A stretch of DNA of 64,000 nt, taken from the IMG/VR virus record IMGVR_UViG_3300013093_000017, positions 62,001 through 126,000 of that record. One strand, given 5' to 3'. Below the pieces are notes generated by a model. That model was not told where the DNA came from, did no database searches, and was given only the letters and a program-made list of their open reading frames with translations. Shown here piece by piece: positions 11,582 to 37,398 of this stretch. The position numbers and the translations under genes are program-made. The stretch's first letter is position 1, and each line of letters begins with the position of its first letter.

Positions 11582-11628
11582 ACAAGTATTTATACATCAA
11601 AACGAATTTCTCCTACCAAATTGAAATA

Positions 11629-11720: not shown

Positions 11721-11726
11721 TTCAAT

Positions 11727-11801: not shown

Positions 11802-11808
11802 AAGTTTT

Positions 11809-11883
11809 GCCTCGTTCATATAGTGGTTATTATGTCCGCCTGTCTAGTGGAACATAGGGGTTCGATTCCCCTACGAGGCGCCA
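11809..11883 (+). tRNA. tRNA-Asp(GTC)
   Basis: TCCGC-CT-GTC-TA-GTGGA, CCA. Confidence 0.9.
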
Positions 11884-11892
11884 AATTAAAGG

Positions 11893-11921
11893 TTGACGTG
11901 AAAAATCGTTGACTATATAAT
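11893..11921 (+). promoter_or_regulatory. Internal sigma70 promoter in tRNA array
   Basis: TTGACG-17-TATAAT. Confidence 0.75.
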
Positions 11922-11943
11922 AGTAACAGTTAGAAAGATCAAT

Positions 11944-12016
11944 TGCGGTAGAAGTGTAGTGGCGCATGATAGTCTCATAAGCTATCGGGGTGGTTCGATT
12001 CCAACGTCCGCATCCA
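11944..12016 (+). tRNA. tRNA-Met(CAT), imperfect stems
   Basis: ATAGT-CT-CAT-AA-GCTAT, TTCGA loop, CCA; mismatches in acceptor and T stems. Confidence 0.7.
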
Positions 12017-12032
12017 TAATTAGGAGAAGTAA

Positions 12033-12194
12033 ATGGCAGTTAAGAAAGCAAATCCAATGCAGACACGCACTGGTAAGACACGGTTAGGTCCATTGAATTT
12101 AACACAGTTACAAACTATGTTAGAAAAGACTTCTAAGAAAAAGATCAAGGCGCAGATTCAAAAGCGCATTGCAGAATTAGAAGCACGTAAGTAA
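12033..12194 (+). CDS. Small basic hypothetical protein (53 aa), not in ORF track
   Basis: SD AGGAGA; MAVKKANPMQTRTGKTRLGPLNLTQLQTMLEKTSKKKIKAQIQKRIAELEARK. Confidence 0.75.
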   Translation: MAVKKANPMQTRTGKTRLGPLNLTQLQTMLEKTSKKKIKAQIQKRIAELEARK

Positions 12195-12202
12195 AGTTTT
12201 AC

Positions 12203-12277
12203 GCCCAGTTAGCAGAGTGGTAATGCGCCTCACTTGTAATGAGGATATCGGGAGTTCGATTCTCTCACTGGGCACCA
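12203..12277 (+). tRNA. tRNA-Thr(TGT)
   Basis: CCTCA-CT-TGT-AA-TGAGG, CCA. Confidence 0.93.
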
Positions 12278-12284
12278 GTATTAA

Positions 12285-12369
12285 GCCCCTTTGGTGGAAT
12301 TGGTAGACACCGCGGTCTTAGAAGCCGCCGACGAAAGTCATGAGAGTTCGAGTCTCTTGGGGGGCACCA
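12285..12369 (+). tRNA. tRNA-Leu(TAG)
   Basis: GCGGT-CT-TAG-AA-GCCGC, long variable arm, CCA. Confidence 0.92.
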
Positions 12370-12379
12370 AAAGTTTTAT

Positions 12380-12453
12380 GCGGGATTAGTTTAATGGTAG
12401 AACTGCAGATTTCCAATCTCCTGGTGAGGGTTCGATTCCCTTATCCCGCTCCA
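12380..12453 (+). tRNA. tRNA-Gly(TCC)
   Basis: GCAGA-TT-TCC-AA-TCTCC, CCA. Confidence 0.9.
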
Positions 12454-12458
12454 GAACA

Positions 12459-12669
12459 CAAGGTTTACACTTTTACCTTATAGAAAGTGGGTCATTGCTA
12501 ATACCAGAACGGCAGGGTGCGCACGATGGTCTAGACCATACCACAAGTCCCACTATCCGGGAGCCTTGAAAGTATCGTGGGAGTTTTATTGTTTCTTACC
12601 ATATGGAAACAGTTGGACAGGGTAACTACTCAGTTTTGGGCTCGGTTGTGCGAGTAGCAAAACACTGAT
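12459..12669 (+). ncRNA. Candidate structured ncRNA(s) between tRNA-Gly and tRNA-Ala
   Basis: CAAGGTT/AGCCTTG multibranch with CACTTTT/AGAAAGTG, TGGTCTAGACCA and TCCC/GGGA hairpins; no credible ORF. Confidence 0.35.
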
Positions 12670-12671
12670 TC

Positions 12672-12746
12672 GGGCTGTTAGTATACTGGGTATTATTCCT
12701 GCCTTGCACGTAGGAGAAGACGGATCGTAACCGTCACGGTCCACCA
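12672..12746 (+). tRNA. tRNA-Ala(TGC)
   Basis: G3:U70 pair, CCTGC-CT-TGC-AC-GTAGG, T-loop ATCGTAA, CCA. Confidence 0.9.
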
Positions 12747-12752
12747 TATTAT

Positions 12753-12829
12753 AGAGGATTAGCTCAGTTGGTACGAGCAACTGCCTTACAAGCAGAAGGT
12801 CACTGGTTCGACCCCAGTATCCTCTACCA
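12753..12829 (+). tRNA. tRNA-Val(TAC)
   Basis: CTGC-CT-TAC-AA-GCAG, CCA. Confidence 0.93.
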
Positions 12830-12836
12830 GTTCTAT

Positions 12837-12915
12837 TCCGCAGAATCCGAGCTAGGCGCACGGACTTGACTGTTAATCAATGATTAGCTGGGTTCGAATC
12901 CCAGATGCGGAGCCA
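12837..12915 (+). tRNA. tRNA-Asn(GTT)
   Basis: TTGA-CT-GTT-AA-TCAA, CCA. Confidence 0.88.
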
Positions 12916-12919
12916 TATT

Positions 12920-13020
12920 TGCAGAGCGTGGGCTAGTCTAGCGTCGACGTACACTCCGAGTTAGTTGCAACTAACAACAGATTGTGAAAACTAGACAACG
13001 AGGTTCGATTCCTTACTGCA
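12920..13020 (+). ncRNA. tRNA-like RNA, same acceptor/T-arm module as 9906-9986
   Basis: TGCAG...GAGG-TTCGATT-CCTT-ACTGCA; internal GTCTAG/CTAGAC and GTTAGTTGCAACTAAC helices. Confidence 0.5.
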
Positions 13021-13029
13021 TCTTAAATT

Positions 13030-13490
13030 TATCGTCGATAGCCGGAGCAAATCCTTTGAGCGGCTTGAGCATAAGCAAGGCACCGAGACGCAGGTGTATA
13101 TTTCCGGTGAAAGTCCGGACGGTAATAGATTTTATCTCCCTCCGTAAAGGATGGAACAGTGAGCTCTCAGTTCCCTGCAAGGTAGTAGTAGACAAGAAGC
13201 AAACAGGCGTACTAGTCATACGCAATGTGCTGATTAGGTCGCTATGCAACCTCTGACAATAGGTCATGACTGGCCAACGATAGGAGACACTTGTAAAGCT
13301 CTCACAGTTTAACCGGTGGTGAAAATCCACAGGGGAGGCCAGTTTTGGGATAGACGGCAAGATCTTAAACGAGTCCTAAGTAGCGTCAGTAGTACGAAAC
13401 ACATTTTGCGCGAAATATAGATGAGCTCTCTTGTTCGAGACAATCCAGCAAGGCCTTTGGAGAAAAGGATAGCTGGGCGCCCAAAAACCC
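13030..13490 (+). ncRNA. Candidate large structured ncRNA (~460 nt; GOLLD/ROOL-type context)
   Basis: GC-richer non-coding block with T-loop hairpins CCGG-TGAAAGT-CCGG and GTGG-TGAAAAT-CCAC and long-range helices CTGGCC/GGCCAG and TTTTGGG/CCCAAAA. Confidence 0.55.
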
Positions 13491-13496
13491 TTTTAT

Positions 13497-13571
13497 GCTT
13501 CGGTAGCTCAGTGGTAGAGCAATCGGTTGATAACCGATAGGCCGGTGGATCGTTCCCACCTCGAAGCACCA
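13497..13571 (+). tRNA. tRNA-Ile(GAT)
   Basis: ATCGG-TT-GAT-AA-CCGAT, T-loop ATCGTTC, CCA. Confidence 0.9.
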
Positions 13572-13579
13572 TTTATATG

Positions 13580-13608
13580 TTGACAGACGGATAAACATCT
13601 GTTATACT
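13580..13608 (+). promoter_or_regulatory. Internal sigma70 promoter
   Basis: TTGACA-17-TATACT. Confidence 0.75.
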
Positions 13609-13775
13609 ATGTTTTAAGATTTGGAAGAAAGCCGGTACATTATGTATTCGAGGTTAGGAGAGACCGGCAAACCGTCCGATTAGAGTAGGTAATACTGCGG
13701 TTCGACTCCGCCGATTGAATTACTGTATGATTCTGCACATACCTAACAGGCCTGTATTGGCCGCAGATCGTTTAT

Positions 13776-13864
13776 GGAAGGTTATGCAATCTGGGATATT
13801 GCCGCGCACTTGAAATGCGCTGGAGCCTACGGGCCAGGAGTTCGATTCTGCCATCCTTCCGCCA
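13776..13864 (+). tRNA. tRNA-Ser(TGA)
   Basis: GCGCA-CT-TGA-AA-TGCGC, long variable arm, G73-CCA. Confidence 0.85.
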
Positions 13865-13876
13865 GTTTGAAAATAC

Positions 13877-13967
13877 GGAGAGTGGGCCGGACGGTAAGGC
13901 ACCACCCTGCTAAGGTGTACACTTGTGATGAACAGGTGACAGGGTTCGACTCCCTGACTCTCCGCCA
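13877..13967 (+). tRNA. tRNA-Ser(GCT)
   Basis: CACC-CT-GCT-AA-GGTG, long variable arm, CCA. Confidence 0.92.
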
Positions 13968-13972
13968 AATAC

Positions 13973-14008
13973 CCGGTGTTAGTTAAATGGATATAACAGG
14001 GGATTTCG
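13973..14008 (+). pseudogene. 5' half of a tRNA-Arg-like gene, truncated in the anticodon loop
   Basis: CCGGTGT-TA-GTTA-AATGGATA-TAAC-A-GGGGA-TTTC, then an abrupt switch to TATAAATA. Confidence 0.65.
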
Positions 14009-14022
14009 TATAAATAAACAAT

Positions 14023-14099
14023 GCGGTTGTAGCTCAGTGGATTAGAGCAACGAGCTTCTACCTCGTTGGCCGGGGGTTCGAGTCCCTCCAGCCGCACCA
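14023..14099 (+). tRNA. tRNA-Arg(TCT)
   Basis: ACGAG-CT-TCT-AC-CTCGT, CCA. Confidence 0.93.
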
Positions 14100-14114
14100 T
14101 TTAATAGAATACTT

Positions 14115-14798
14115 ATGTATCAAAAATTAACTAACTGTAAATATTGCAATGTTTCATTACTTGAAATGACTACTTCTCGGCGAGCAAATCACTCTCGATG
14201 GTGCAAACTAAATCCTAAGCATACTGAATATATAAATGCATTAGAAATTTCTAGAGAGAATATAGTTAATCGACGTAATCAATTTATGAAGGCTAAAGAG
14301 GATGGAAGGCCGATTCCGCCAGGAACACAGACCGGAAAACCAGGTACAATGTTAGGTAAGAAGCATTCTTCTAAAACTAAACAGCGTCAAAAAGAAAAGG
14401 CACTAGCAAGTCCTCATAGAAGATTAGTTAGATCTATTCGGAAATATACAAAAAAGGACGGAACTATAGTTAGTTTAGATTCGTTCTGGGAAGAAGCATT
14501 AGCTATTCGGCTTGATACTATAGGTGTTAACTGGATAAGACCGTCGCCTATTAAATGGATAGACAATGATAACGTAACTCATAATTACTTTCCAGATTTC
14601 TATCTACCAGAGTTTGATTTATATTTAGATCCAAAAAACCCGTATGCTGTCAAAGCTCAACAAGTTAAGATACAGTGTTTAAAACAGCAAATACAAAACC
14701 TTATAATTATAACAAGTTTAGAGGATTGCAACAATTATATTCCTCAACCAGTATTGCCCTATAGTTCAATGGAAGAACGGCTCCCTTATAAGGAGTGA
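14115..14798 (+). CDS. Free-standing homing endonuclease (NUMOD3-like repeat, PD-(D/E)XK nuclease)
   Basis: GKKHSSKTKQRQKE, SFWEE, YFPDFYLPEFDLYLDPK; its 3' end overlaps tRNA-Ile(TAT). Confidence 0.75.
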   Translation: MYQKLTNCKYCNVSLLEMTTSRRANHSRWCKLNPKHTEYINALEISRENIVNRRNQFMKAKEDGRPIPPGTQTGKPGTMLGKKHSSKTKQRQKEKALASPHRRLVRSIRKYTKKDGTIVSLDSFWEEALAIRLDTIGVNWIRPSPIKWIDNDNVTHNYFPDFYLPEFDLYLDPKNPYAVKAQQVKIQCLKQQIQNLIIITSLEDCNNYIPQPVLPYSSMEERLPYKE

Positions 14799-14846
14799 GT
14801 GCTAGATAAGCCGCTAATGTAGGTTCGAGTCCTACTAGGGGTACCA
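14755..14846 (+). tRNA. tRNA-Ile(TAT) with long variable arm
   Basis: GCTCC-CT-TAT-AA-GGAGT, ~20 nt variable arm, CCA; top of acceptor stem imperfect. Confidence 0.75.
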
Positions 14847-14848
14847 AT

Positions 14849-14923
14849 GCTGATGTAGCGTAGAGGTAGCGCAACGCCTTGGTAAGGCGTAGGTCGTGGG
14901 TTCAACTCCCATCATCAGCACCA
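14849..14923 (+). tRNA. tRNA-Thr(GGT)
   Basis: ACGCC-TT-GGT-AA-GGCGT, CCA. Confidence 0.92.
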
Positions 14924-14942
14924 GCAATACAGTAAGATCAAT

Positions 14943-14972
14943 TGGCTCATGGTGTAGTGGTAGCACAACTCA
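14943..14972 (+). pseudogene. 5' fragment of a tRNA-Gln-like gene
   Basis: TGGCTCA-TG-GTGT-AGTGGTA-GCAC-A-ACTCA; ends before the anticodon loop. Confidence 0.6.
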
Positions 14973-15012
14973 AAAAAATCCTTTATGTTGCTAAATACAG
15001 TAAGGAGATAAT

Positions 15013-15573
15013 ATGTTAGTTACTATTATAGAATACATGAACCAGACGAGAGAAGAAAGACGCTCTCGATTAAAGTTAGATGAACCATGCGATGAGCGCG
15101 GATTAGTGTACAGTTATCATTTAACTGGGCTATTAGCGTACTTAACAAACACAAGTATACCTAAAAAAGGTGATAACGCTATTGTGTGTCATGGATGTAA
15201 CAACGCAAAATGTTCAAACCCAAATCATTTATATTGGGGATCTTATAAGGATAATCATACGGATCAGGTTGAAAATGGAACATGGGATAGTCCGTATGCT
15301 AGGGCTAAGAAAAAATACAGTACTGTTGAGATGAATGAGATATACTCAAACAATGCCAAAGGTAATAAAGGTAATAAACAACCTAGATCCGAAGAGCATA
15401 AAAGAAAAATATCTGAGTCAATGAAAAAAGTTCAGCAAGAACTAAATCCTAATTTAGGAAAAGTAAGAAACAAAGTAGAATGCCCTCATTGTGGAAAGCA
15501 AGGTGCTATGAATACAATGAGCCGATGGCATTTTGATAATTGTCTTAATAGGCGTGTGGTGAAGATGGCTTAA
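15013..15573 (+). CDS. Free-standing HNH homing endonuclease with NUMOD3-like repeat and Zn ribbon
   Basis: VCHGCNNAKCSNPNHLYWGSYKDN, RSEEHKRKISESMK, CPHCGK; its 3' end overlaps tRNA-Gln. Confidence 0.8.
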   Translation: MLVTIIEYMNQTREERRSRLKLDEPCDERGLVYSYHLTGLLAYLTNTSIPKKGDNAIVCHGCNNAKCSNPNHLYWGSYKDNHTDQVENGTWDSPYARAKKKYSTVEMNEIYSNNAKGNKGNKQPRSEEHKRKISESMKKVQQELNPNLGKVRNKVECPHCGKQGAMNTMSRWHFDNCLNRRVVKMA

Positions 15574-15627
15574 CACACTGGATTTTGATTCCAGCATTCC
15601 TAGGTTCGAATCCTAGCACGCCTGCCA
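15550..15627 (+). tRNA. tRNA-Gln(TTG)
   Basis: CTGGA-TT-TTG-AT-TCCAG, CCA. Confidence 0.92.
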
Positions 15628-15747
15628 GAACAGTCCGGGAACAGCTCTCCTTTCGTAAGAAAGTGTAACTGACTATAGCTGGGATTTACCAGTGAACTTA
15701 CAGGACGCTGTAAGGTACGGGCATACAGGAGGATAACTCCAATCTAT

Positions 15748-15821
15748 TCCGGTGTAGTATAATGGCAGTGCGACGGTCTCCAAAACCGTTAGTGGGGGTT
15801 CGATTCCCTCCACCGGAGCCA
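15748..15821 (+). tRNA. tRNA-Trp(CCA)
   Basis: ACGGT-CT-CCA-AA-ACCGT, CCA. Confidence 0.93.
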
Positions 15822-15830
15822 AACAATGTG

Positions 15831-15859
15831 TTGACTTTTAGTTAAGTTGATAGTATAAT
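15831..15859 (+). promoter_or_regulatory. sigma70 promoter
   Basis: TTGACT-17-TATAAT. Confidence 0.75.
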
Positions 15860-15886
15860 GTGCTTTTATTTGAAATGGAGCATGAA

Positions 15887-16351
15887 ATGTCAAAAGTTAT
15901 TAAATCAGAGTATGTTGAAGCAGCCATGGAACAATTAGATAGTGCGGCTAAATTACTCAAAACAGCCTACACCAATCCAAACAAAAATCTTGTGTTAATA
16001 TTAGACATGATTGATGATATTTGGGGGCAATTAGAATTGCTAGCTGATACACAGTACGACAAAGAAAATCCAGGTAAAGAAATGACGCAGGCTCAATATG
16101 ACACTGAGCACAGTGAGCGGGTGGCTAGGATTAAAGCCCTACAAGAAGTTACCATTACCAAAGTAGACAAGGCCACATTCAAAGCCATTAGTGATGATTT
16201 ATACACAGCAATTGGCAATGTCAGTGGCAAATACAATCTGTCTATTGCCTTTCCGTTATCCAGTTTCTCATTCCGTGCCTATGATTCGGAGAATCCCGAG
16301 CAGTATTGGCCACTAGGTAGAGAGTTTGATACAGAAATAAATCCATTATAG
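15887..16351 (+). CDS. Hypothetical protein
   Basis: ORF 15860-16351; likely start ATG 15887 after SD GGAG. Confidence 0.7.
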   Translation: MSKVIKSEYVEAAMEQLDSAAKLLKTAYTNPNKNLVLILDMIDDIWGQLELLADTQYDKENPGKEMTQAQYDTEHSERVARIKALQEVTITKVDKATFKAISDDLYTAIGNVSGKYNLSIAFPLSSFSFRAYDSENPEQYWPLGREFDTEINPL

Positions 16352-16352
16352 G

Positions 16353-16381
16353 TTGACAGGTACCATATGCTCCTGTATTAT
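16353..16381 (+). promoter_or_regulatory. sigma70 promoter
   Basis: TTGACA-17-TATTAT. Confidence 0.65.
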
Positions 16382-16409
16382 TAATGAATAGTCAAAAGGA
16401 CAAAAGAAT

Positions 16410-16979
16410 ATGAACGTTACATTACGTAAAGCAAGTGCGTTACAGAACGCAATCAACGACACAATCAAAGGCATTCAGCTTAAAGTAGCTGTAAACCTAA
16501 GTGAGTTCCAAGATGCAGAAACAGTAATTTCTAAATCTCGCCAAGCATTGTTAAACAATGTTGATCGCAAGGTAGCACTAACCAAGGCATTGTATGCAAT
16601 TCGCGCCTCAGTAGGTGCAGCAAACAACGCCTCAGTAGATGCACTGTTGGCACAGGTAGCACAGGTTGAAAAAACAATCCAAATCTACACAAACTTAGCT
16701 GAAACAGAAGTGCGTGAAGATGCCACAGTTATTGCAGGTAAGTTGGATAAGATTAAGAACCGCACAGCAGATGCTCGTCCAAGTTACTACGGACACAGTG
16801 ACGAAGTAAACACCAGTGTATTAACACAAGATGATATTGAATCTTTCCGAGGTTTCATTGCACTGGCAAAGAAAAACAAACAGACTTTGCAGGATCAAAT
16901 CCTTGAAGCAAACGTTCGCACTGAAATCACTTTAGATGCAGACACAGTAGCAACACTAACAGCAGAAAAATTGCTGTAA
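16410..16979 (+). CDS. Helical protein, possibly DIP1984-like family
   Basis: Coiled-coil pattern; C-terminal LQDQILEANVRTEITL resembles the DIP1984-type ending (family call tentative). Confidence 0.6.
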   Translation: MNVTLRKASALQNAINDTIKGIQLKVAVNLSEFQDAETVISKSRQALLNNVDRKVALTKALYAIRASVGAANNASVDALLAQVAQVEKTIQIYTNLAETEVREDATVIAGKLDKIKNRTADARPSYYGHSDEVNTSVLTQDDIESFRGFIALAKKNKQTLQDQILEANVRTEITLDADTVATLTAEKLL

Positions 16980-17021
16980 TAGTTTTTGGTGGTTTGGCTC
17001 TAGGGCTAAAATCACCCAGAT

Positions 17022-17249
17022 GTGAGAAAGAGACGAGGATTGGCAAGGACATCATACATCGTATGATTCCATACTTAATGAGCAATCGCCTTGAAAAGCG
17101 ATCGTGTTTGCGTGTTCCGGTTATTATATAAATTTGTTTATTGCCACCGTTGAAATATGCAAGCCCCTGTGTTTTGAACATTGTCTTTTGTCAGCGGATA
17201 TTATAATAATATCTTTTGTCATTTGCTGTGCCATTTACTTACTTTCTCA
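17022..17249 (+). ncRNA. Candidate ncRNA downstream of 16410-16979
   Basis: TGAGAAAG/CTTTCTCA long-range closure; repeated (A/T)TTG motifs separated by short hairpins. Confidence 0.4.
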
Positions 17250-17261
17250 ATCTGTTTCTTC

Positions 17262-17339
17262 GCACACGTGGCTGAGTGGCCCAAAGCAGCGGCCTGCAAA
17301 GCCGTAAAACCGCCGGTTCAAATCCGGCCGTGTGCTCCA
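17262..17339 (+). tRNA. tRNA-Cys(GCA)
   Basis: GCGGC-CT-GCA-AA-GCCGT, U73-CCA. Confidence 0.92.
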
Positions 17340-17340
17340 T

Positions 17341-17416
17341 AGTAATGTAGCATAGTGGCTAATGCGGCACCTTCATACGGTGTATATCGTGAGTTCGAGT
17401 CTCACCATTACTACCA
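17341..17416 (+). tRNA. tRNA-Met/Ile2(CAT)
   Basis: GCACC-TT-CAT-AC-GGTGT, CCA. Confidence 0.88.
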
Positions 17417-17423
17417 GCTTTAC

Positions 17424-17532
17424 ATTAACAACCTTAACGCAACTCGGTACACGGATACCTGATCAGTGGGAGTGTTTGACATAGTCGGACCGCTGCAACA
17501 CTGTGGGTGGCAAAGCCGTGCTCGTTGTTAAT
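17424..17532 (+). ncRNA. Candidate small structured RNA
   Basis: ATTAACAAC/GTTGTTAAT closing stem with nested CACGG/CCGTG and CAGTG/CACTG helices. Confidence 0.4.
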
Positions 17533-17534
17533 TT

Positions 17535-17610
17535 GCCCTGTTAGTTCAACGGATTAGAATTAGAGTCTTCGAAACTCAGGATGGGGGTTCGATTCCCTCA
17601 CGGGGCACCA
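17535..17610 (+). tRNA. tRNA-Arg(TCG)
   Basis: GAGT-CT-TCG-AA-ACTC, CCA. Confidence 0.9.
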
Positions 17611-17660
17611 AACAAGTAATCGCATAATGTAGCGGAATACACTACGTTATGTAAATCAAT

Positions 17661-17736
17661 GCGGCTGTAGCTCAGTTGGTAGAGCGTCTGCTTGCCAAGC
17701 AGAAGGTCACGAGTTCGAGACTCGTTAGCCGCTCCA
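17661..17736 (+). tRNA. tRNA-Gly(GCC)
   Basis: TCTGC-TT-GCC-AA-GCAGA, CCA. Confidence 0.94.
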
Positions 17737-17746
17737 TTTATTTTGA

Positions 17747-17775
17747 TTGACAGTTGGTAATACCTATGCTATAAT
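17747..17775 (+). promoter_or_regulatory. sigma70 promoter
   Basis: TTGACA-17-TATAAT. Confidence 0.8.
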
Positions 17776-17799
17776 ATGCTTGTACAGTTAGGAAATGAT

Positions 17800-18105
17800 A
17801 TGAAACACTACGTATATGAACCAGGTATAAAGAAAATTGAAAAAGTATTACCGTATTCTGTGGCTGTTCCGCAGGGTTATAAAACTCACGCACAGGCCCT
17901 ATGCCAACGAATATTAGGCAAAAGATATTGTCGTTGGGATCCAAGATGGCGCAGAGTTAATAATTGGACAGTGAAAACCACTACCAGGTGGACAGTATAT
18001 GAAGATGCAGTTTGGCACTACAAAGATGGTATACTTTACTTCAAAGATGAAGCTAATACTAAAATGCTTACAATGGTATTATTAAGTAAAACCAAAAGGA
18101 GATAG
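17800..18105 (+). CDS. Hypothetical protein
   Basis: ORF 17776-18105; likely start 17800 after AGGA. Confidence 0.65.
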   Translation: MKHYVYEPGIKKIEKVLPYSVAVPQGYKTHAQALCQRILGKRYCRWDPRWRRVNNWTVKTTTRWTVYEDAVWHYKDGILYFKDEANTKMLTMVLLSKTKRR

Positions 18106-18109
18106 TACT

Positions 18110-18592
18110 ATGAAACCATGGATTGAAAACATCAGCTTAGAAGATGTAAAGAAAGGCTATCACCACGATGCTGGCGATAATTCTATGCTAATTCAAATCG
18201 TAGATCCTGGTGTAGAGTTTCCAACTCCTAAGTACAAGTTTAAGCGAGTATCACAGTACTTCTTCCTTGATGTAGAGGATAGAGATATTCCCGGTGCTAT
18301 ATTTGATGCGGCAATCACTGACGCAGACGCTATCGGTATTGCCGAAGATTTGAAATACGCATTGGCCAATAACATGAACGTAATTGTTCACTGTCATATG
18401 GGTGTGTGCCGTAGTGGTGCTGTAGCAGAAGTAGGTGTTATGTTAGGTTTCCAAGATACTGAAAAGTATCGTATTCCTAACACAATGGTCAAGCGTAAAC
18501 TTATGGAATACTTTGGTATGACATACACAGAGTCCGAGCTCCCTAAAGGGGCTTGGGCACTTGACGAAAATGGAATTAGACATTATTATTAA
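18110..18592 (+). CDS. Protein-tyrosine/dual-specificity phosphatase-like protein
   Basis: VHCHMGVCRS (CX5R) motif. Confidence 0.8.
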   Translation: MKPWIENISLEDVKKGYHHDAGDNSMLIQIVDPGVEFPTPKYKFKRVSQYFFLDVEDRDIPGAIFDAAITDADAIGIAEDLKYALANNMNVIVHCHMGVCRSGAVAEVGVMLGFQDTEKYRIPNTMVKRKLMEYFGMTYTESELPKGAWALDENGIRHYY

Positions 18593-18598
18593 GAATAT

Positions 18599-18674
18599 GC
18601 TACCTTAGCTCATCTGGTAGAGCACCGGCCTGAAGAGTCGGGTGTGCTTGGTTCAAGTCCAAGAGGTAGCACCA
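18599..18674 (+). tRNA. tRNA-Phe(GAA)
   Basis: CCGGC-CT-GAA-GA-GTCGG, CCA. Confidence 0.92.
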
Positions 18675-23404: not shown

Positions 23405-23499
23405 GCGGTCGTAAGCAAAAGGCAAAGCTCTAGGACCTAGGTCCTAGGATAGGGAGAACCTAGTTCCCCTTGTTGGTTCGACTCCAGCCGACCGTACCA
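23405..23499 (+). tRNA. Orphan tRNA-Leu-like gene with palindromic, non-canonical anticodon arm
   Basis: GCGGTCG/CGACCGT acceptor, A73-CCA, D arm, long variable arm, GTTGG-TTCGACT-CCAGC T arm; anticodon arm CTAGGA-CCTAGG-TCCTAG. Confidence 0.7.
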
Positions 23500-31576: not shown

Positions 31577-32579
31577 ATTTAGCGGCAATGACATCAACGG
31601 TGGAACAATTACTAATTTTGCCAGCACGGGCATAACTGATAATAGTACTAAGCAATCTTTAGTTGTCGAAGACGACAAGATCACAGTTAAAACAGCAACT
31701 ATTGACACACTTAATCAAGGCATTACCATCAAAGGCGATGTTAAGATCTATGGTATATTAGATGCTGGATTTGTTCGTACTACAGAATTCATTACCAATC
31801 AACGCTACGAAAAACAATACCTAGAATTTTCTAATCCCAGCGGTGAATCAGCAGGTACTGGACTACTTTGGTTAGGTGCTCAAAATCGTCAATTCGTATT
31901 CATGCAGAATCCAGACCGCTTTTGGTCAACTGAAAATTTCGATCTATTAGGTGGTAAATCATACCTTATTGATAGTACTCCTGTATTGTCAGCAGATACG
32001 TTAGGACCAGGAGTAGTTAAGAGCAGTATTCAATCAGTCGGCACACTTAACAGTCTTGCTGTTGCAGGTGAAGTTACCATTGATGATCATATTTTCTACA
32101 ATCCAGTATCACAAAGATTAAGCATTGGACAAGAAAGTGGCAATGGTCTATTAAGCGTCTACGATTACATCAACAACGTTGAGGTAGTACTTGATAGCAA
32201 CGAATTAGGACACGGTGTAATTGGTACCTACAGCACCAAGGCACTTGACATTATCACAGATGATCAAACACGTTTAAGTATCAGCGAAACTGGCAATCTA
32301 ACAATTGGTAACGAATATAAAGATAGTACAGTAACTCGCGTCTACGGCAAAATGGGCGTAGGTGTAAAGAATCCTACAGAACAATTAGAAGTAGCAGGTA
32401 ACATCAAATTTGGCAATCGATTGTTTGCCAACGGTAATTCAGCTCCTATAGACGGCAGCTATCAAATTGGTGACATCGTTTGGAACTCTAATCCGCGTAT
32501 TGATTCATACGTTGGATGGGTATGCATCACAGGTGGTGCTCCAGGGCAATGGAAACCATTCGGTAAGATCGAATCATAA
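31560..32579 (+). CDS. Probable virion structural/tail-fibre-related protein
   Basis: beta-rich; MGVGVKNPTEQLEVAG repeat and GDIVWN...GWVC...GQWKPFG C-terminus. Confidence 0.6.
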   Translation: MVKIFEFSGNDINGGTITNFASTGITDNSTKQSLVVEDDKITVKTATIDTLNQGITIKGDVKIYGILDAGFVRTTEFITNQRYEKQYLEFSNPSGESAGTGLLWLGAQNRQFVFMQNPDRFWSTENFDLLGGKSYLIDSTPVLSADTLGPGVVKSSIQSVGTLNSLAVAGEVTIDDHIFYNPVSQRLSIGQESGNGLLSVYDYINNVEVVLDSNELGHGVIGTYSTKALDIITDDQTRLSISETGNLTIGNEYKDSTVTRVYGKMGVGVKNPTEQLEVAGNIKFGNRLFANGNSAPIDGSYQIGDIVWNSNPRIDSYVGWVCITGGAPGQWKPFGKIES

Positions 32580-32638
32580 TCTGCCACTAAAATTCCCTGT
32601 GAAGCAATATTAAATATTGTTTTACAGGAATACTCATT

Positions 32639-32977
32639 ATGGCACATATCACTCAAAAACTATCATCTTTCAGAGACCATCTCATTAAATTAAATTACGA
32701 CCGTAAGGTCTGGCTGTTTCTTAGCGGAGGTGCATTCTTCGCTATTGTAGGAATCATACTTGGTTGGAATAAACTAACCGTCATAAATTCAAATGTCATT
32801 TGGACAATTATCGCACTTGGCGCTATTATATTAGCAGTTGCTTGGTGGTATTGGACTATGATGCTAATACGCAAACTACTCGAGATTCAAATTGATGTAG
32901 TTGACATTCTTAAAGAACTAACTACTGATATTAAAGTTATCAGAGTAGAAGTAAAAGATATCTTTACTAAAAATTAG
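32639..32977 (+). CDS. Two-TM membrane protein
   Basis: Two hydrophobic segments followed by a coiled coil. Confidence 0.7.
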   Translation: MAHITQKLSSFRDHLIKLNYDRKVWLFLSGGAFFAIVGIILGWNKLTVINSNVIWTIIALGAIILAVAWWYWTMMLIRKLLEIQIDVVDILKELTTDIKVIRVEVKDIFTKN

Positions 32978-33044
32978 CGGTCTTGGTGTCAACCCGCTTG
33001 ACAAATTCTGCCACCTATGTTACAATTATAAATCATCATAGGAG
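32976..33044 (+). promoter_or_regulatory. preQ1-I-like pseudoknot with SD-sequestering hairpin, overlapping a sigma70 promoter
   Basis: AGCGG/CCGCT stem, loop TGGTG can pair with TGCCA, CCTATG/CATAGG covers the SD; TTGACA(32998)-17-TACAAT also present. Confidence 0.4.
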
Positions 33045-33050
33045 ATAGAT

Positions 33051-33083
33051 ATGGCTTGGGTAATTGATAAAACGTTTGAATTT
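33051..33083 (+). pseudogene. Orphaned 5' end of ancestral queD
   Basis: SD AGGAGA, MAWVIDKTFEF aligns with MGYKFTIDKEFSF at the start of 33873-34418. Confidence 0.7.
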
Positions 33084-33112
33084 GACATAAATATATCAAA
33101 CAGGAGTCTGCT

Positions 33113-33883
33113 ATGTCAAAATATTATGTGTACGAATATCGCCATCCACTAACAAATATTCCGTTCTATGTAGGTAAAGGAACAGGAACTCGTATGTACA
33201 AACACTTAAACGAAACTAAAGACAATACAGAAAATTACAAGAAGTGGGCATATATACAAGGGTTGCGAAACAAAGGATTAGAGCCTATAATAGTAAAAGT
33301 ATTTGAAACTGATTCGTCTACCGATGCGTATAATGAAGAAACAAAATTGATAAAACTTTATGGTAGAAGAGATATAGACGAAAACGGAATTCTAACTAAT
33401 ATATGCGAAGATAATAGGCCACCTAAGACTACTGGACCCAGAAGTGAAGAAACAAAATTAAAGATGTCTCTTGCTAAAAAAGGAAAACCCAACCATCAAT
33501 TAGGGTTAAAGAGGTCTAAAGAAACTAAACAGAAAATAAGTTTAGCCAATAAGGGCAAGCCCGGCACAATGACAGGCAAAACACACACTGAAGAAACTAA
33601 ACAGAAAATTGCTAACTCAAATAAAGAAGCGTGGACAGAAGAAAAGAGAGAAGAAGCAAGTAACCGAATGTTAGGTAAACAGTTTACAGAAGAACACAAA
33701 CAGAAATTGTCAGAGTCGCATAAAGGGAACATTGCGTCTGATGAGACAAAACAAAAGATGAGCAATGCTCAAAAATTAGCAAGTGTATCAAGAAGTAAAA
33801 TAGTATCAGAAAAACTTAAAGGCAAACCGTGGTCAGAAGCACGCAGAGCTGCACAACTTAAAAGGAAAACAAATGGGTTATAA
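33113..33883 (+). CDS. GIY-YIG homing endonuclease with NUMOD3 repeats
   Basis: YYVYEY..PFYVGKG..R; repeated SEETKxKxS motifs. Confidence 0.85.
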   Translation: MSKYYVYEYRHPLTNIPFYVGKGTGTRMYKHLNETKDNTENYKKWAYIQGLRNKGLEPIIVKVFETDSSTDAYNEETKLIKLYGRRDIDENGILTNICEDNRPPKTTGPRSEETKLKMSLAKKGKPNHQLGLKRSKETKQKISLANKGKPGTMTGKTHTEETKQKIANSNKEAWTEEKREEASNRMLGKQFTEEHKQKLSESHKGNIASDETKQKMSNAQKLASVSRSKIVSEKLKGKPWSEARRAAQLKRKTNGL

Positions 33884-34418
33884 ATTTACAATAGACAAAG
33901 AATTTTCGTTCGAGATGGGACATCGGGTATGGGCACAAAAATTAGATCGCCCGGATTTAAGTATCGAAACTGAATGTGCGTGTAAACATCTTCACGGACA
34001 TTCTTATTCCATCAAAGTATTCTTAGGAGCAGATACCTTAGATCAAAGTTCTATGGTAACAGATTTTAAGAACTTAAACTTTATGAAAGAGTTCGTAGAT
34101 AGTGTGTTAGATCATAAGTTTATGATCGATATCAATGATCCTAATTTCCAAATTATCACAGCTACACAAATTGCTCCGCCACTGCCAGAACATATTCCAA
34201 ACTTCACTAATTTATCTTCTATAATTGACGGAGATCATTTCCATCATTCCATTAGATCACATTGGGGTGGTTTCGTATTAGTGGACTTTGTTCCCACAAG
34301 TGAAAACATCTGTAAGTATCTCAAACTATATGCCCAAGAACGCATCGGTGATTTTGCTAAAGTAACAGCCGTTGAACTTTGGGAAACTAAGAAATCGCAT
34401 TGTCGTTACGAAGATTAA
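33873..34418 (+). CDS. queD: 6-carboxytetrahydropterin synthase (QueD/PTPS)
   Basis: GHRV, CKHLHGHSY, DFK..LDHKF, PTSEN, ELWET. Confidence 0.9.
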   Translation: MGYKFTIDKEFSFEMGHRVWAQKLDRPDLSIETECACKHLHGHSYSIKVFLGADTLDQSSMVTDFKNLNFMKEFVDSVLDHKFMIDINDPNFQIITATQIAPPLPEHIPNFTNLSSIIDGDHFHHSIRSHWGGFVLVDFVPTSENICKYLKLYAQERIGDFAKVTAVELWETKKSHCRYED

Positions 34419-34419
34419 T

Positions 34420-34626
34420 ATGTTATTAGGATGGGGCAGTGACGCATTCACTGAAGCAGAAGAAAGAGCAAAAGAAAGGAATAGTATAAACGACAAGGAA
34501 TGGTTAGAGAAAGTAGATACTGCTTTCAAAGTATATGAAGAAAAGTTTGGCCCTCAAAACAATGCTGCGGCATTTATAGATTGGCTATTTAAGCAGTACG
34601 GTATCGTACACAAGGATAAGAATTGA
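34420..34626 (+). CDS. Hypothetical protein
   Basis: ORF 34372-34626; likely start 34420. Confidence 0.6.
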
Positions 34627-35555
34627 AAAAGATTTTAGTTACAGGCGGTGCTGGATTTCTAGGAAGCCACCTTTGTGAACGTTTAGTCAAAGAAGGGCAT
34701 CATGTGTTATGTGTTGATAATTACTTTACTGGATCTAAGAGTAATATTGAACACCTGTTAGATTACAAGAACTTTGAAGTAATGCGACATGATGTGTGTC
34801 TTCCGTTATATGTTGAAGTAGATGAGATCTATAATTTAGCCTGTCCAGCAAGCCCGATACACTATCAACACGATCCAATCCAAACTACCAAAACTAGTTT
34901 CCTTGGTGCTTTCAATATGTTAGGACTGGCAAAGAGAACTGGTGCCAAGATTCTACAGGCCAGTACTAGTGAGATTTACGGTGATCCATTAGAGCATCCA
35001 CAAACTGAAGAGTATTGGGGCAATGTAAACACCATCGGTACACGTAGTTGTTACGATGAAGGTAAGCGTGCCGCAGAAACATTATGTTTTGACTATTATC
35101 GTCAACATGGTGTTCGTATCAAAGTTATTCGTATTTTCAACACATACGGTCCTCGAATGGCCAAGGCAGACGGTCGTGTAGTCAGCAACTTTATTGTACA
35201 GGCCTTAGAAGGTAAAGACCTTACTATCTACGGTAACGGTGACCAAACCCGTAGTTTCTGTTATGTAGATGATCTAGTTGAAGGAATTATTCGTATGATG
35301 GCCACTGATGATACTGTGTTAGGTCCTGTTAATTTAGGTAATCCAAACGAATTTACCATTAGAGAGCTTGCTGAAAATGTACTGGCACTTACTGGCGGTA
35401 ACAACAAACTTGTACAAGAACCACTGCCTAGCGATGATCCTCAACAACGACAACCAAATATAGACCGTGCTAAACAGTTATTAAATTGGGCGCCTACTAT
35501 TCAATTGAAAGACGGATTGATCAAAACGATTGAGTACTTTCGTACAGTTACTTGA
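34623..35555 (+). CDS. UDP-glucuronate decarboxylase (UDP-xylose synthase)
   Basis: [42 protein letters not shown]. Confidence 0.92.
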
Positions 35556-35783: not shown

Positions 35784-36805
35784 AAAAAATTGGCTTTGCT
35801 TGTAAGTGGATTGACAGTACAGATCAGGTTAATGGTATTAAACCTACAGATGATGCTAAACAGTACAATACTGGTAGCACTACTGTGGCTTGGCTTAATC
35901 GACAAACACGTGATGTAGCTGAACAAAAGCTATGGGACCTAATGGTCCAAAATATCGAAAGTACACATAAATTAATCAACAAGGTTGGAGCATTAGATGA
36001 ATCGCTTAGGATGGTTCGTATCAGCAGTGATATATTACCAGTATATACAGAGTCTACTTGGAGTTATTTTTGGCGCCGCCCTGACGTCCGCAATTATTGT
36101 GAACAAGCGTTCGCTCAAGTGGGTAGCAGTGCTCGTAGCCTTGGGGTGCGCTTATCTTTTCATCCGGGTCAATTCACTGTTTTGGCAAGCGACAATCCAG
36201 ACATTGTCCAGCGCAGCATAGAAGAGTTTGAATACCATGCAGACATGATTCGCATGATGGGCTATGGTCAAAAGTTCCAAGACTTTAAATGTAACGTGCA
36301 TATTGCAGGTCGTCTAGGCTATCAAGGTATACTAGATGTGTACCCTAAACTAAGTGTTGAAGCACGTAACACTATTACTATTGAAAACGAGGAGATGAAA
36401 CATGGTCTTGATGATTGCCTCAATCTTGTCGATACTTTACCTATTGTTCTTGATATCCACCACCATTGGGTCCGCGAAGGGCATTACATTGATCTTAAGG
36501 ATGCCAGAATTGCACGCATTCTTGACAGTTGGCGCGGCCTGCGTCCTACGCTACACTATTCTGTATCCAGAGAAGACGTTCTCACCGCTCATTCATCTAG
36601 TACAGCTCCTAACCACAGCCTACTACTAGAGCAAGGCTACAAGAAAAGTAAGATGCGTGCGCACAGTGACTTCTATTGGAATACTGCGGTCAATGATTGG
36701 GCTCTTAGTTTCTTAGACAAGTTTGATATCATGTGCGAGGCAAAAGGAAAAAATTTAGCATCGTTTGCTCTTCACACTCGTGCTAAGGAACTTGGGCTCG
36801 TTTAG
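35780..36805 (+). CDS. uvsE: UV damage endonuclease UvsE/UvdE
   Basis: IGFAC, RISSDILP, SFHPGQF, IENEE, LDIHHH, RAHSD, MCEAK. Confidence 0.92.
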   Translation: MKKIGFACKWIDSTDQVNGIKPTDDAKQYNTGSTTVAWLNRQTRDVAEQKLWDLMVQNIESTHKLINKVGALDESLRMVRISSDILPVYTESTWSYFWRRPDVRNYCEQAFAQVGSSARSLGVRLSFHPGQFTVLASDNPDIVQRSIEEFEYHADMIRMMGYGQKFQDFKCNVHIAGRLGYQGILDVYPKLSVEARNTITIENEEMKHGLDDCLNLVDTLPIVLDIHHHWVREGHYIDLKDARIARILDSWRGLRPTLHYSVSREDVLTAHSSSTAPNHSLLLEQGYKKSKMRAHSDFYWNTAVNDWALSFLDKFDIMCEAKGKNLASFALHTRAKELGLV

Positions 36806-37361
36806 CTTCCCAATATTTGAGCATAGATTGTCGTTTCTTTTCTAATGCTTCAGGTGTATGTTTTCTACCTTTGTTTGATTTTCCTAACTCAGAAACTTGC
36901 TTCTTTCTATCAAGATTATCTACCCAATTTTTCTTAGAAGATTCTGTCCAGACTTTTTGATGTTCTTCACTTCTCGGTTTTGGAATACCTTTACAAGATT
37001 CTGATAAATTCTTTTTGTGCTCGTTGCTGCGTGGGGGTTTTTTGGTGCCTGTTAGTTTCTTGCTAATAACATCTCTTACCTCTTGACTTGGTGATTGACC
37101 ATCTCCACCATATGTTAAGTTTACAAGAGATCCACCATCTTGTTTTAGCCCATATTGCTGTATGAGTTTTTTCTCTAGATCAAATGCTTCTTTTTCGGAT
37201 AGGTGCTCGTGAAGAATTTGTATCTTACTATCATCTTTAGGTTTAATGTCAGCACCATTAGATCTTTTATGCGATACCCACGCACGATCTAATTTACCTT
37301 TTCCGATGTAGTAAGGTGTGTTATCTTCTCTTATATATTGATAAACGTAGTAAATATTCAT
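36783..37361 (-). CDS. GIY-YIG homing endonuclease with NUMOD3 repeats
   Basis: YYVYQY..PYYIGKG..R, NLTYGGDG; convergent with and overlapping the uvsE 3' end. Confidence 0.85.
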   Translation of the reverse strand: MNIYYVYQYIREDNTPYYIGKGKLDRAWVSHKRSNGADIKPKDDSKIQILHEHLSEKEAFDLEKKLIQQYGLKQDGGSLVNLTYGGDGQSPSQEVRDVISKKLTGTKKPPRSNEHKKNLSESCKGIPKPRSEEHQKVWTESSKKNWVDNLDRKKQVSELGKSNKGRKHTPEALEKKRQSMLKYWEAKRAQVP

Positions 37362-37398
37362 ATAGTTATTTATCACATTATGTGTGAAACTAAACTTA

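What the first reader, a model, noticed from the sequence alone, without database searches (positions are those of the whole stretch)
33040..33920. GIY-YIG endonuclease inserted into the start of queD and supplying a new N-terminus
Seen: a strong SD and ATG at 33051 encode MAWVIDKTFEF, then the sequence switches to ATAAATA and a GIY-YIG/NUMOD3 gene. The end of that gene overlaps a fresh queD start, MGYKFTIDKEFSF-EMGHRV, which aligns with the orphan peptide. There is no room for an intron core. Inference: the same insert-and-replace strategy as in the tRNA array, here applied to a protein gene; it also uncouples queD translation from its original leader and SD.
Basis: partly seen in the sequence, partly recalled or inferred. 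Interest (0 to 1): 0.65.

Follow-up and report, generated by a model that had tools for sequence, protein, structure and literature searches.

The report
Homing endonuclease replaced a queD gene
In this lake-water jumbo phage a selfish GIY-YIG homing endonuclease gene sits just after codon 12 of one type of queD gene, of which only that stub remains, and is followed by a complete queD of a distantly related type, so the nuclease occupies a coding sequence without an intron.

Summary
A strong promoter-like site, SD and ATG at 33051 encode MAWVIDKTFEF. Then come a 256-aa GIY-YIG/NUMOD3 gene (33113-33883) and a PTPS/QueD gene (33873-34418) whose start overlaps the nuclease's end by 11 nt.

The stub is not the old start of the present queD. 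It matches (35/35 nt) the 5' end of a second PTPS lineage, which I call QueD-II. About 100 viral contigs carry QueD-II intact (MAWVIDKTFEFCYGHRVW...).

The downstream gene is a complete QueD-I-type gene, 37% identical to QueD-II. Its MGYK start is the ordinary QueD-I start, also seen in endonuclease-free relatives.

Both types fill the same slot (membrane protein - queD - uvdE) in syntenic phages. Six other contigs, in three or four more backgrounds, carry the same break (TGT TA|). One has an intact-QueD-II relative 95% identical up to the break.

In one background a 1.49-kb block (nuclease, QueD-I, small ORF) replaces exactly the rest of QueD-II. No intron was detected.

Best reading: intronless homing that destroys the target gene and delivers an immune substitute. 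This is a new variant of a known kind. Cleavage itself is untested.

The parts
32998..33026 (+). Promoter-like site of the queD slot (TTGACA, 17-nt spacer, TACAAT with upstream TG). It now precedes the stub and the nuclease gene.
   Evidence: One search gives 11 of 12 matches. The leader 32972-33027 is 89% identical to the leader directly upstream of an intact queD in syntenic L006.
33041..33045 (+). Shine-Dalgarno AGGAG of the former queD start.
   Evidence: Read directly from the sequence.
33051..33086 (+). Orphan 5' stub (12 codons, MAWVIDKTFEF+D) of a QueD-II-type PTPS gene. The frame runs on to a stop at 33152, giving a 33-codon ORF that overlaps the nuclease start.
   Evidence: 35/35 nt to L184 and 32/32 nt to L152 and L200. 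11/11 aa to intact QueD-II of L126. About 100 contigs carry the same start contiguous with CYGHRVW. Alignment A4.
33087..33112 (+). Short cassette leader with the nuclease's own SD (AGGAG at 33102-33106).
   Evidence: It aligns with the 38-nt leader of the L002-type cassette.
33113..33883 (+). Free-standing GIY-YIG homing endonuclease gene with three NUMOD3 DNA-binding repeats ('HEG-A', 256 aa).
   Evidence: Pfam. A PDB GIY-YIG protein, 9u75, matches at E 0.0019. Orthologues in L002, L128 and L041 are 57-59% identical and sit at the same site. dN/dS among those orthologues is 0.05-0.10.
33862..33866 (+). SD (AAGGA) for the present queD, embedded in the nuclease's 3' end.
   Evidence: The overlap ATGGGnTATAA is kept in L002. 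It is also kept in L003 and L004, where only the last ~85 nt of the nuclease gene survive.
33873..34418 (+). Complete QueD-I-type PTPS/QueD gene (181 aa) that replaces QueD-II.
   Evidence: Pfam PTPS 9e-26. 79% aa identity to L002-L004, 74-78% to L005-L011, and 37% to syntenic QueD-II of L213. Identity to L002 is even along the whole gene, with no mosaic breakpoint. GHRVW, C-x4-HGH and DHKF are visible.
34421..34626 (+). Small ORF (68 aa from the ATG at 34421) directly after queD. It may belong to the imported block.
   Evidence: A 40%-identical ORF follows QueD-I in L006. Syntenic QueD-II loci have no homologue. The right end of the replaced block could not be fixed in the window.

Best explanation
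The queD slot of this phage lineage (membrane-protein gene, leader, queD, then uvdE) once held a QueD-II-type gene. A free-standing GIY-YIG/NUMOD3 homing endonuclease gene (HEG-A) now sits after codon 12 plus 2 nt of that gene. It is followed, with an 11-nt overlap, by a complete QueD-I-type gene, a distant relative (37% identity) that presumably does the same job.

Proposed mechanism. HEG-A cuts the conserved 5' end of QueD-II genes in co-infecting phages, in the IDKTFEFCY/GHRV coding stretch. The break is repaired from the HEG-bearing genome. Repair copies in HEG-A and the linked QueD-I gene, which lacks the site and is immune, and erases the rest of QueD-II. The 12-codon stub is what lies left of the break. 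It also serves as the left homology arm for the next round.

HEG-A has no promoter-like site of its own before it, so it would be read from the resident queD promoter. QueD-I translation is coupled to the end of HEG-A.

Shown: the anatomy; the lineage of the stub and of the new gene; the shared slot; the identical break point in other backgrounds, one with a matched intact allele; an exact replacement of the rest of QueD-II in the L002 background; purifying selection on HEG-A; and no detectable intron.

Inferred: cleavage and its exact site, immunity of QueD-I, repair-driven spread, expression from the old promoter, and functional equivalence of the two PTPS types.
For: - Stub identity: 35/35 nt to intact QueD-II. 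QueD-II is a full 182-183-aa PTPS, Pfam 7.6e-28.
- The present gene is QueD-I along its whole length. Its start is native to HEG-less QueD-I genes.
- Same slot: L213, L233, L185 and L132 carry the membrane-protein gene, QueD-II and uvdE in the window's order. L006 carries the window-like leader, then QueD-I, then uvdE.
- Same break elsewhere: L002 (with L164, L189, L191), L128 and L041 all end the stub at TGT TA| followed by HEG-A.
- L041 and intact L168 are 95% identical over 2.3 kb, up to the break and no further.
- Against QueD-II relatives such as L206, L002:3289-~4780 (HEG-A, QueD-I and a 74-aa ORF) replaces exactly QueD-II from codon 13 to its stop (514 nt). Homology resumes right after that stop.
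- HEG-A genes have diverged a lot (dS 0.8-1.7) under strong constraint (dN/dS 0.05-0.10). Yet the stubs of L041 and L128 are identical, and each left flank resembles intact QueD-II alleles: L041 = L168 for 57 nt, while L128 is only ~88-89% identical to L120-type alleles over 122 nt. This fits repeated entry into resident genes.
- A second, unrelated-strand GIY-YIG gene (HEG-B), also linked to QueD-I, left a 29-codon QueD-I stub in L005 and a 28-codon QueD-II C-terminal remnant in L007-L011.
- No RNA family match.
- Both junctions are confirmed in independent metagenomes.
Against: - No cleavage data exist, and the cut site is unknown.
- For the window's own lineage no near-isogenic empty allele was found. 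Only its own record and a 259-kb sibling hold the leader-plus-stub sequence.
- The window's right boundary cannot be placed between 34418 and 35780.
- QueD-I and QueD-II also swap ORF-for-ORF in near-isogenic phages with no nuclease or stub present (L012 against L168). So replacement does not strictly need this HEG.
- The high nucleotide conservation of the presumed target is biased by how the loci were retrieved.
- The 65%-complete record shows FolE but neither QueC nor a TGT/DpdA gene. The pathway served by this PTPS is therefore not established.
Confidence: 0.68

Rival explanations
1. The endonuclease cassette carries only a recoded copy of the first ~13 codons. It patches the same queD gene it interrupted, and the body of the gene is the resident one.
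For: The stub and the new start align (IDK-x-F-x-F), and the nuclease's end overlaps the new ATG.
Against: - The stub is QueD-II at 35/35 nt. The body is QueD-I throughout: 80% nt identity to L002 in every 20-codon block outside the variable loop, and 35-37% aa identity to QueD-II.
- The MGYK-type start occurs in QueD-I genes with no nuclease nearby.
- In L128 and L041 the same stub and HEG-A are followed by a third, bimodular PTPS-like gene.
Confidence: 0.04
2. The nuclease is a bystander. Ordinary modular or illegitimate recombination swapped QueD-II for QueD-I. The HEG merely sits at the exchange boundary, or arrived later.
For: - L012 (QueD-I) and L168 (QueD-II) are 97-98% identical on both sides. 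They differ by an ORF-precise swap with no nuclease and no stub.
- Nuclease genes are known to mark exchange boundaries (PMC10448857).
- L002 and L003 are 99.6% identical from inside HEG-A onward but only 84% identical upstream.
Against: - Every one of the seven stub-bearing contigs has HEG-A directly after the stub, at the same nucleotide. They span different upstream contexts and two different downstream PTPS genes.
- No stub occurs without HEG-A.
- HEG-A is kept intact under purifying selection.
Confidence: 0.2
3. An intron or other RNA-level rescue: the stub is exon 1 and is joined to ...EMGHRV at about 33912 by splicing or ribosomal bypass.
For: Joining 33083 to 33912 would be in frame. 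No RNA data are available to exclude it directly.
Against: - No Rfam match at E<=1 across 32600-34500.
- Only 27 nt 5' and about 28 nt 3' lie outside the nuclease ORF.
- The downstream gene already has its own SD, its own ATG and a full native N-terminus.
- The stub comes from a different gene lineage.
- In L128 and L041 the stub precedes a gene with no matching joint.
Confidence: 0.02

Closest known systems
Intronless homing by free-standing GIY-YIG endonucleases of T4 (SegF, SegG, SegE, SegB) and MobE (review PMC2988022; SegB PMC2330249)
   Same: - A free-standing GIY-YIG gene with no intron lies next to a variant of its target gene that it does not cut.
- The presumed spread is by a break in the HEG-less genome and repair with co-conversion of flanking DNA.
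- It behaves as a promoter-less cassette read from an upstream promoter, with an overlapping stop and start (T4 segF overlaps the ORF upstream of it by 11 bp; here it is HEG-A's 3' end that overlaps the downstream queD by 11 nt).
   Different: - T4 Seg genes sit between genes, and the converted flank is an allele of the same gene.
- Here the insertion point lies inside the target's coding sequence (codon 13). The target is destroyed and a stub is left.
- Function is carried by a different lineage of the family (37% identity), not by a resistant allele.
Genes-in-pieces made by HEG insertion (Aeh1 nrdA/mobE, T4 gene 39/60 mobA, phage 25 gene 43; reviewed in PMC2988022)
   Same: A free-standing HEG is inserted within a conserved coding region without an intron.
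   Different: There the two halves stay and reassemble as subunits. Here the 3' part of the target is deleted and a whole substitute gene is supplied. The 12-codon stub has no plausible enzymatic role.
Mitochondrial mobile ORFs with a foreign C-terminus and an orphaned native C*-terminus (Allomyces atp6, Glomus atp6/atp9/cox2/nad3; PMC3630166, citing Paquin et al. 1994)
   Same: The endonuclease ORF enters a protein gene without an intron, brings replacement coding sequence, and leaves the native end as an orphan. The native piece matches relatives and the imported piece is divergent.
   Different: - The geometry is mirrored: a 5' stub here, a 3' stub there.
- There only the terminus is replaced, giving a hybrid gene. 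Here the entire ORF is replaced by a distinct paralogue lineage.
- This case is a phage, not an organelle.
HEGs at boundaries of genetic exchange in ICP1 phages (PMC10448857)
   Same: Sharp identity breaks coincide with nuclease genes, for example L002 against L003 inside HEG-A.
   Different: A text search of that paper for 'remnant', 'pseudogene' and similar terms found no passage describing a target-gene stub or a substitute gene.

Membership tests
GIY-YIG homing endonuclease (free-standing, Seg-like) | N-terminal GIY-YIG catalytic domain with the conserved Tyr, Tyr, Arg, Glu and Asn | tested here: met
   Pfam LEM-3-like GIY-YIG 2.5e-11. PDB GIY-YIG protein 9u75 at E 0.0019. VYEY, FYVGKG, GTR, EET and TNI are conserved across four orthologues.
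GIY-YIG homing endonuclease (free-standing, Seg-like) | C-terminal DNA-binding module | tested here: met
   NUMOD3 2.5e-23, three stretches.
GIY-YIG homing endonuclease (free-standing, Seg-like) | Presence/absence polymorphism at one defined site among related genomes | tested here: met
   Seven occupied contigs against about 100 intact QueD-II alleles with the same sequence up to TGT TA. The L041/L168 pair is 95% identical up to the break.
GIY-YIG homing endonuclease (free-standing, Seg-like) | Site-specific cleavage of the HEG-less allele and repair-driven inheritance | not testable with these tools
   Needs enzyme assays or crosses. The phage is known only from metagenomes.
PTPS / QueD (Pfam PF01242) | Profile match over the full T-fold domain | tested here: met
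   Window gene 9e-26 over profile positions 1-119. QueD-II of L213 scores 7.6e-28.
PTPS / QueD (Pfam PF01242) | Zn-ligand histidines and catalytic Cys (GH-R, C-x4-HGH) and the D-H pair | tested here: met
   GHRVW, CKHLHGH and DHKF are present in the window protein. The stub ends before the first histidine, so it cannot be active.
PTPS / QueD (Pfam PF01242) | CPH4-synthase role in a 7-deazaguanine pathway | tested here: inconclusive
   FolE is present. QueC and TGT/DpdA were not found in the 229-kb, 65%-complete record. A queF-like gene lies next to queD in L003.
Group I (or II) intron with an embedded HEG | Ribozyme core flanking the ORF | tested here: not met
   No Rfam match at E<=1 in 32600-34500. 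Only 27 nt lie between stub and nuclease ORF, and the ORF's last 11 nt already overlap the next gene's start.
Mitochondrial-type mORF gene hybrid | Only the gene's terminus is replaced, so the rest of the ORF is the resident gene | tested here: not met
   The whole ORF is QueD-I and the stub is QueD-II.

The most novel reading that the evidence does not exclude
The queD slot of these freshwater jumbo phages is the arena of a nuclease-driven arms race. At least two GIY-YIG endonucleases (A and B) each travel with an immune PTPS gene and overwrite sensitive ones. Their pressure would maintain three mutually non-recombining PTPS lineages (QueD-I, QueD-II and a bimodular form) as alternative 'alleles' in otherwise 95-98% identical genomes. 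On this reading, swapping in a distant isofunctional gene is both the nuclease's way of entering a coding sequence without an intron or intein and the phage's way of becoming resistant. The retained stub would act as homing arm and, in some cassettes, as an RNA partner that masks the nuclease's ribosome-binding site.
Probability: 0.3. Interest if true: 0.75.

Novelty: new variant of a known kind. Interest (0 to 1): 0.6.

Why it matters
Homing endonuclease genes that enter coding sequences are thought to need an intron or intein, or else to split the gene into subunits that reassemble. This locus suggests a fourth route in a phage: destroy the target and bring a distant substitute for it.

It also offers a concrete, testable reason why isofunctional but strongly divergent gene lineages coexist at one locus in near-identical phages. 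And it names a predicted target sequence, the 5' end of QueD-II, for a new GIY-YIG enzyme.

For annotation, short strongly initiated 'orphan' ORFs upstream of nuclease genes can be fossils that reveal the target.

Tried and rejected
- Megablast of 32600-34700 against INPHARED phages found no match. tblastn there gave only distant QueD hits (<=45%) and Seg-like hits (<=36%), so no cultured relative is known.
- I looked for a mosaic breakpoint inside the window's queD that would mark an N-terminal patch. There is none: identity to L002 is even along the gene.
- Midway I held that the stub travels as part of the cassette, because no QueD-I gene starts with MA. I dropped this once the pattern scan showed intact QueD-II genes with exactly this start, and left flanks resembling intact alleles: identical for 57 nt in L041/L168, about 88-89% in L128.
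- An Rfam scan for an intron found nothing.
- A search for a QueD-II C-terminal remnant in the window found none. One exists only in L007-L011 and L038.
- An exact-pattern scan of metagenome contigs for an empty allele of the window's own lineage returned only the window's record and its sibling.
- No RNA run holds the region, so splicing and expression could not be checked.
- A hairpin masking the nuclease's SD is strong in L002 (z = -3.5) but absent in the window (z = +0.5). It is not claimed for the window.
- The nucleotide-conservation profile of QueD-II ranks the presumed target among the most conserved stretches. But the loci were retrieved with patterns from those very stretches, so it carries little weight.

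Full report
**What is in the window.**
- A promoter-like site lies at 32998-33026: TTGACA, 17 nt, TACAAT with an upstream TG, 11 of 12 matches.
- AGGAG at 33041-33045 and an ATG at 33051 encode MAWVIDKTFEF. The frame then continues as unrelated residues to a stop at 33152.
- A 256-aa ORF (33113-33883) has its own AGGAG at 33102-33106. It matches Pfam LEM-3-like GIY-YIG (2.5e-11) and three NUMOD3 repeats (2.5e-23).
- A 181-aa ORF (33873-34418) overlaps the nuclease's last 11 nt and matches Pfam PTPS from profile position 1 (9e-26).
- The window is bases 62001-126000 of a 229,675-bp IMG/VR virus record estimated 65% complete. It comes from lake and freshwater metagenomes.

**The arrangement is real.** Contigs assembled from other public studies cover both junctions without a single difference: left X3 32899-33174, X4 32810-33134, X6 32506-33145; right X4 33794-34138, X6 33654-33986, X8 33832-33987. 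None skips the nuclease gene. All runs are DNA, so nothing can be said about RNA.

**First set of relatives: QueD-I.** A scan of viral contigs with the window's QueD gave 39 loci. Their N-termini follow M-(x)-(Y)-K-W-x-IDK-E/S/T-F-x-F/W-E-M/G/A-GHRVW. The window's MGYKFTIDKEFSFEMGHRV is therefore an ordinary start for this lineage, which I call QueD-I. HEG-less genes such as L006, L014, L017, L029, L031 and L032 begin M-x-Y-K-W-V/T-IDK.

L006 shares the window's synteny: a tail-fibre-like gene, a small membrane-protein gene, a leader, queD, a small ORF, and uvdE. Its leader is 89% identical to window 32972-33027, followed directly by an intact QueD-I. The nuclease has a 57%-identical orthologue in L002. 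That orthologue overlaps the QueD-I start in the same way (ATGGGnTATAA). L003 and L004 keep only the last ~85 nt of the nuclease gene as leader and SD of an otherwise 99.6%-identical queD region.

**The turning point: QueD-II.** Aligning the window with L002 showed that L002 also has a stub, MAHIIDKTFEFC-stop, just before its nuclease gene. L041 and L128 have one as well. I then scanned viral contigs for the 20-nt core of the stub. This returned 118 stretches, and about 100 of them hold an intact gene that begins MA(H/W)(I/V)IDKTFEFCYGHRV(W/H)TQKLNGEYAADLKCAC.

This is a full-length 182-183-aa PTPS (Pfam 7.6e-28). It is only 35-39% identical to QueD-I. I call it QueD-II.
- The window's stub is identical to QueD-II alleles at 35/35 nt (L184) and 32/32 nt (L152, L200).
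- The window's queD resembles L002's QueD-I evenly along its whole length, and no block resembles QueD-II. No QueD-II C-terminal remnant is present in the window.

**Both lineages occupy the same slot.** L213, L233, L185 and L132 have the window's gene order with QueD-II between the membrane-protein gene and uvdE. L006 and a group of others (L016, L018, L020-24, L034, L037) have QueD-I there. Elsewhere, L168 (QueD-II) and L012 (QueD-I) are 97-98% identical on both sides. They differ by an ORF-precise swap running from the SD-ATG spacer to the next gene's ATG.

**The break point is the same in other backgrounds.** In alignment A4 the occupied alleles of L002, L041 and L128 run with intact QueD-II genes up to TGT TA (codon 12 plus 2 nt). 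All three then switch to the same cassette leader. The window's own stub ends one codon earlier in form, reading GAC AT, and it has a shorter leader.
- L041 and intact L168 are 95% identical over 2.3 kb, ending exactly at the break.
- L002 was compared with a dozen QueD-II-bearing relatives such as L206. Homology covers the upstream genes and 48 nt of SD plus stub. It is then interrupted by L002:3289-~4780 (nuclease, QueD-I and a 74-aa ORF, about 1.49 kb) in place of the 514 nt from QueD-II codon 13 to its stop. It resumes immediately after that stop.
- In L128 and L041 the same stub and nuclease are followed by a third gene, a bimodular PTPS-like one (Pfam PTPS 1.2e-4), joined by an ATGA overlap.

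The constant unit is thus the stub plus the nuclease. The linked substitute gene can differ.

**The nuclease looks functional and mobile.** Among L002, L128 and L041 the nuclease genes have dS of 0.8-1.7 but dN/dS of 0.05-0.10, and the GIY-YIG motifs are conserved in all four orthologues. Despite that divergence, the stubs of L041 and L128 are identical. Each occupied allele's left flank resembles intact QueD-II alleles: L041 matches L168 for 57 nt, while L128 is about 88-89% identical to L120-type alleles over 122 nt. This fits the nuclease entering resident QueD-II genes repeatedly, or continual conversion of the left arm. It does not fit one old insertion inherited vertically.

**A second nuclease does the same kind of thing.** In L005 a different GIY-YIG gene lies on the opposite strand (HEG-B, 226 aa). 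It follows a 29-codon stub of a QueD-I gene and precedes a new leader and a full QueD-I. The two copies of the 29 codons differ by many synonymous changes. HEG-B with the same leader and QueD-I occurs in L007-L011 and L033. There the block replaces a pyrimidine-dimer glycosylase-like gene and QueD-II codons 1 to about 160, leaving a 28-codon QueD-II C-terminal remnant.

**What it is not.** An Rfam scan at E<=1 found nothing on either strand of 32600-34500. There is no space for a ribozyme core. The downstream gene has its own SD, ATG and native N-terminus. The N-terminal patch idea fails because stub and body belong to different lineages.

A bystander role for the nuclease cannot be excluded, since clean QueD-I/QueD-II swaps occur without it. 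But every stub found is followed at the same nucleotide by HEG-A, and no stub occurs without it.

**How it most likely works.** The closest known process is intronless homing by T4 Seg and Mob endonucleases. Those are promoter-less cassettes read from upstream promoters. They overlap neighbouring ORFs, cut a nearby gene in the HEG-less phage, and are copied in together with flanking DNA (PMC2988022; SegB, PMC2330249).

Two features are unusual here. The insertion point lies inside the target's coding sequence. And the linked 'immune' gene is not a resistant allele but a 37%-identical member of the same enzyme family, so the target is destroyed and replaced. The nearest precedent in form is the mitochondrial mobile ORF, which brings a foreign C-terminus and leaves the native one as an orphan (PMC3630166). 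That case replaces only a terminus, at the other end of the gene. Nuclease genes at exchange boundaries have been described in ICP1 phages (PMC10448857), and the L002/L003 identity break inside HEG-A is of that kind.

**Limits.**
- Cleavage, its site and the immunity of QueD-I are inferred.
- The window's right boundary is not defined. The small ORF at 34421-34626 has a homologue after QueD-I in L006 but none in QueD-II loci. A 310-aa epimerase/dehydratase-like gene lies between queD and uvdE only in the window.
- No empty allele of the window's own lineage is on record.
- The record holds FolE but no QueC or TGT/DpdA, so calling the gene queD rather than a pterin PTPS rests on family membership and on a queF-like neighbour in L003.
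- The names QueD-I, QueD-II, HEG-A and HEG-B are mine.

**Verdict.** This is a new variant of intronless homing, in which a free-standing nuclease overwrites its target gene with a divergent substitute and leaves a 12-codon fossil behind the old promoter.

Noticed in passing
L005:3099-4525: A second, independent case at the same slot. A 29-codon QueD-I stub is followed by a GIY-YIG gene on the minus strand (3187-3867, 'HEG-B'), then a new leader and a full QueD-I. The duplicated 29 codons differ by many synonymous changes.
   Followed up: partly
L007:4542-4625 (also L008-L011, L038): A 28-codon C-terminal remnant of QueD-II lies directly after the stop of QueD-I. It marks the right edge of a HEG-B plus QueD-I block that replaced QueD-II codons 1 to about 160.
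   Followed up: partly
L003:3467-3548 and L004 (same region): Only the last ~85 nt of HEG-A survive, serving as leader and SD of QueD-I and preceded by a queF-like gene. From that point on the locus is 99.6% identical to L002, but only 84% upstream. This is an exchange boundary inside the nuclease gene.
   Followed up: partly
L168:3925-4580, L012:2780-3430, L041:2365-2515: Three phages 95-98% identical in their flanks carry three different fillings of the slot: QueD-II, QueD-I, and stub plus HEG-A plus a bimodular PTPS-like gene. The QueD-I/QueD-II swap is ORF-precise, from the SD-ATG spacer to the next gene's ATG.
   Followed up: partly
L128:2-646 (minus strand); L041:3151-3358: A bimodular PTPS-like gene (Pfam PTPS 1.2e-4) follows HEG-A in place of QueD-I. 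Its first half lacks the HGH motif and its second half has C-x4-GHGH. It may be a third isofunctional lineage.
   Followed up: no
window 36783-37376 (minus strand): Another GIY-YIG gene (197 aa, about 37% identical to HEG-B) is convergent with uvdE and overlaps its 3' end. L213 has a GIY-YIG gene at the same position. The queD-uvdE module is therefore flanked by nucleases on both sides.
   Followed up: no
window 10039-18674: The 24-tRNA array is interrupted by endonuclease-like ORFs: 10700-11581 (minus strand), 14115-14798 and 15013-15573 (HNH-like with a NUMOD3-like repeat). A 25th ARAGORN call at 23405-23499 has an odd 2-nt anticodon.
   Followed up: no
L002:3236-3345: An RNA hairpin (-20.7 kcal/mol, z = -3.5, 0 of 200 shuffles as stable) pairs the 3' half of the stub with the SD and AUG of HEG-A. 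This could be translational masking of the nuclease. It is not seen in the window (z = +0.5).
   Followed up: partly
window 32972-33027 vs L006:2548-2604: The leader with the promoter-like site and a preceding short inverted repeat is 89% identical between phages whose neighbouring membrane-protein genes are only about 32% identical at the protein level. It looks like a conserved regulatory element of the slot.
   Followed up: no
window 34623-35555: A 310-aa NAD-dependent epimerase/dehydratase-like gene (by the look of its sequence; no family scan was run) lies between queD and uvdE. It is absent from syntenic L006 and L213. It may be further cargo or a separate insertion.
   Followed up: no
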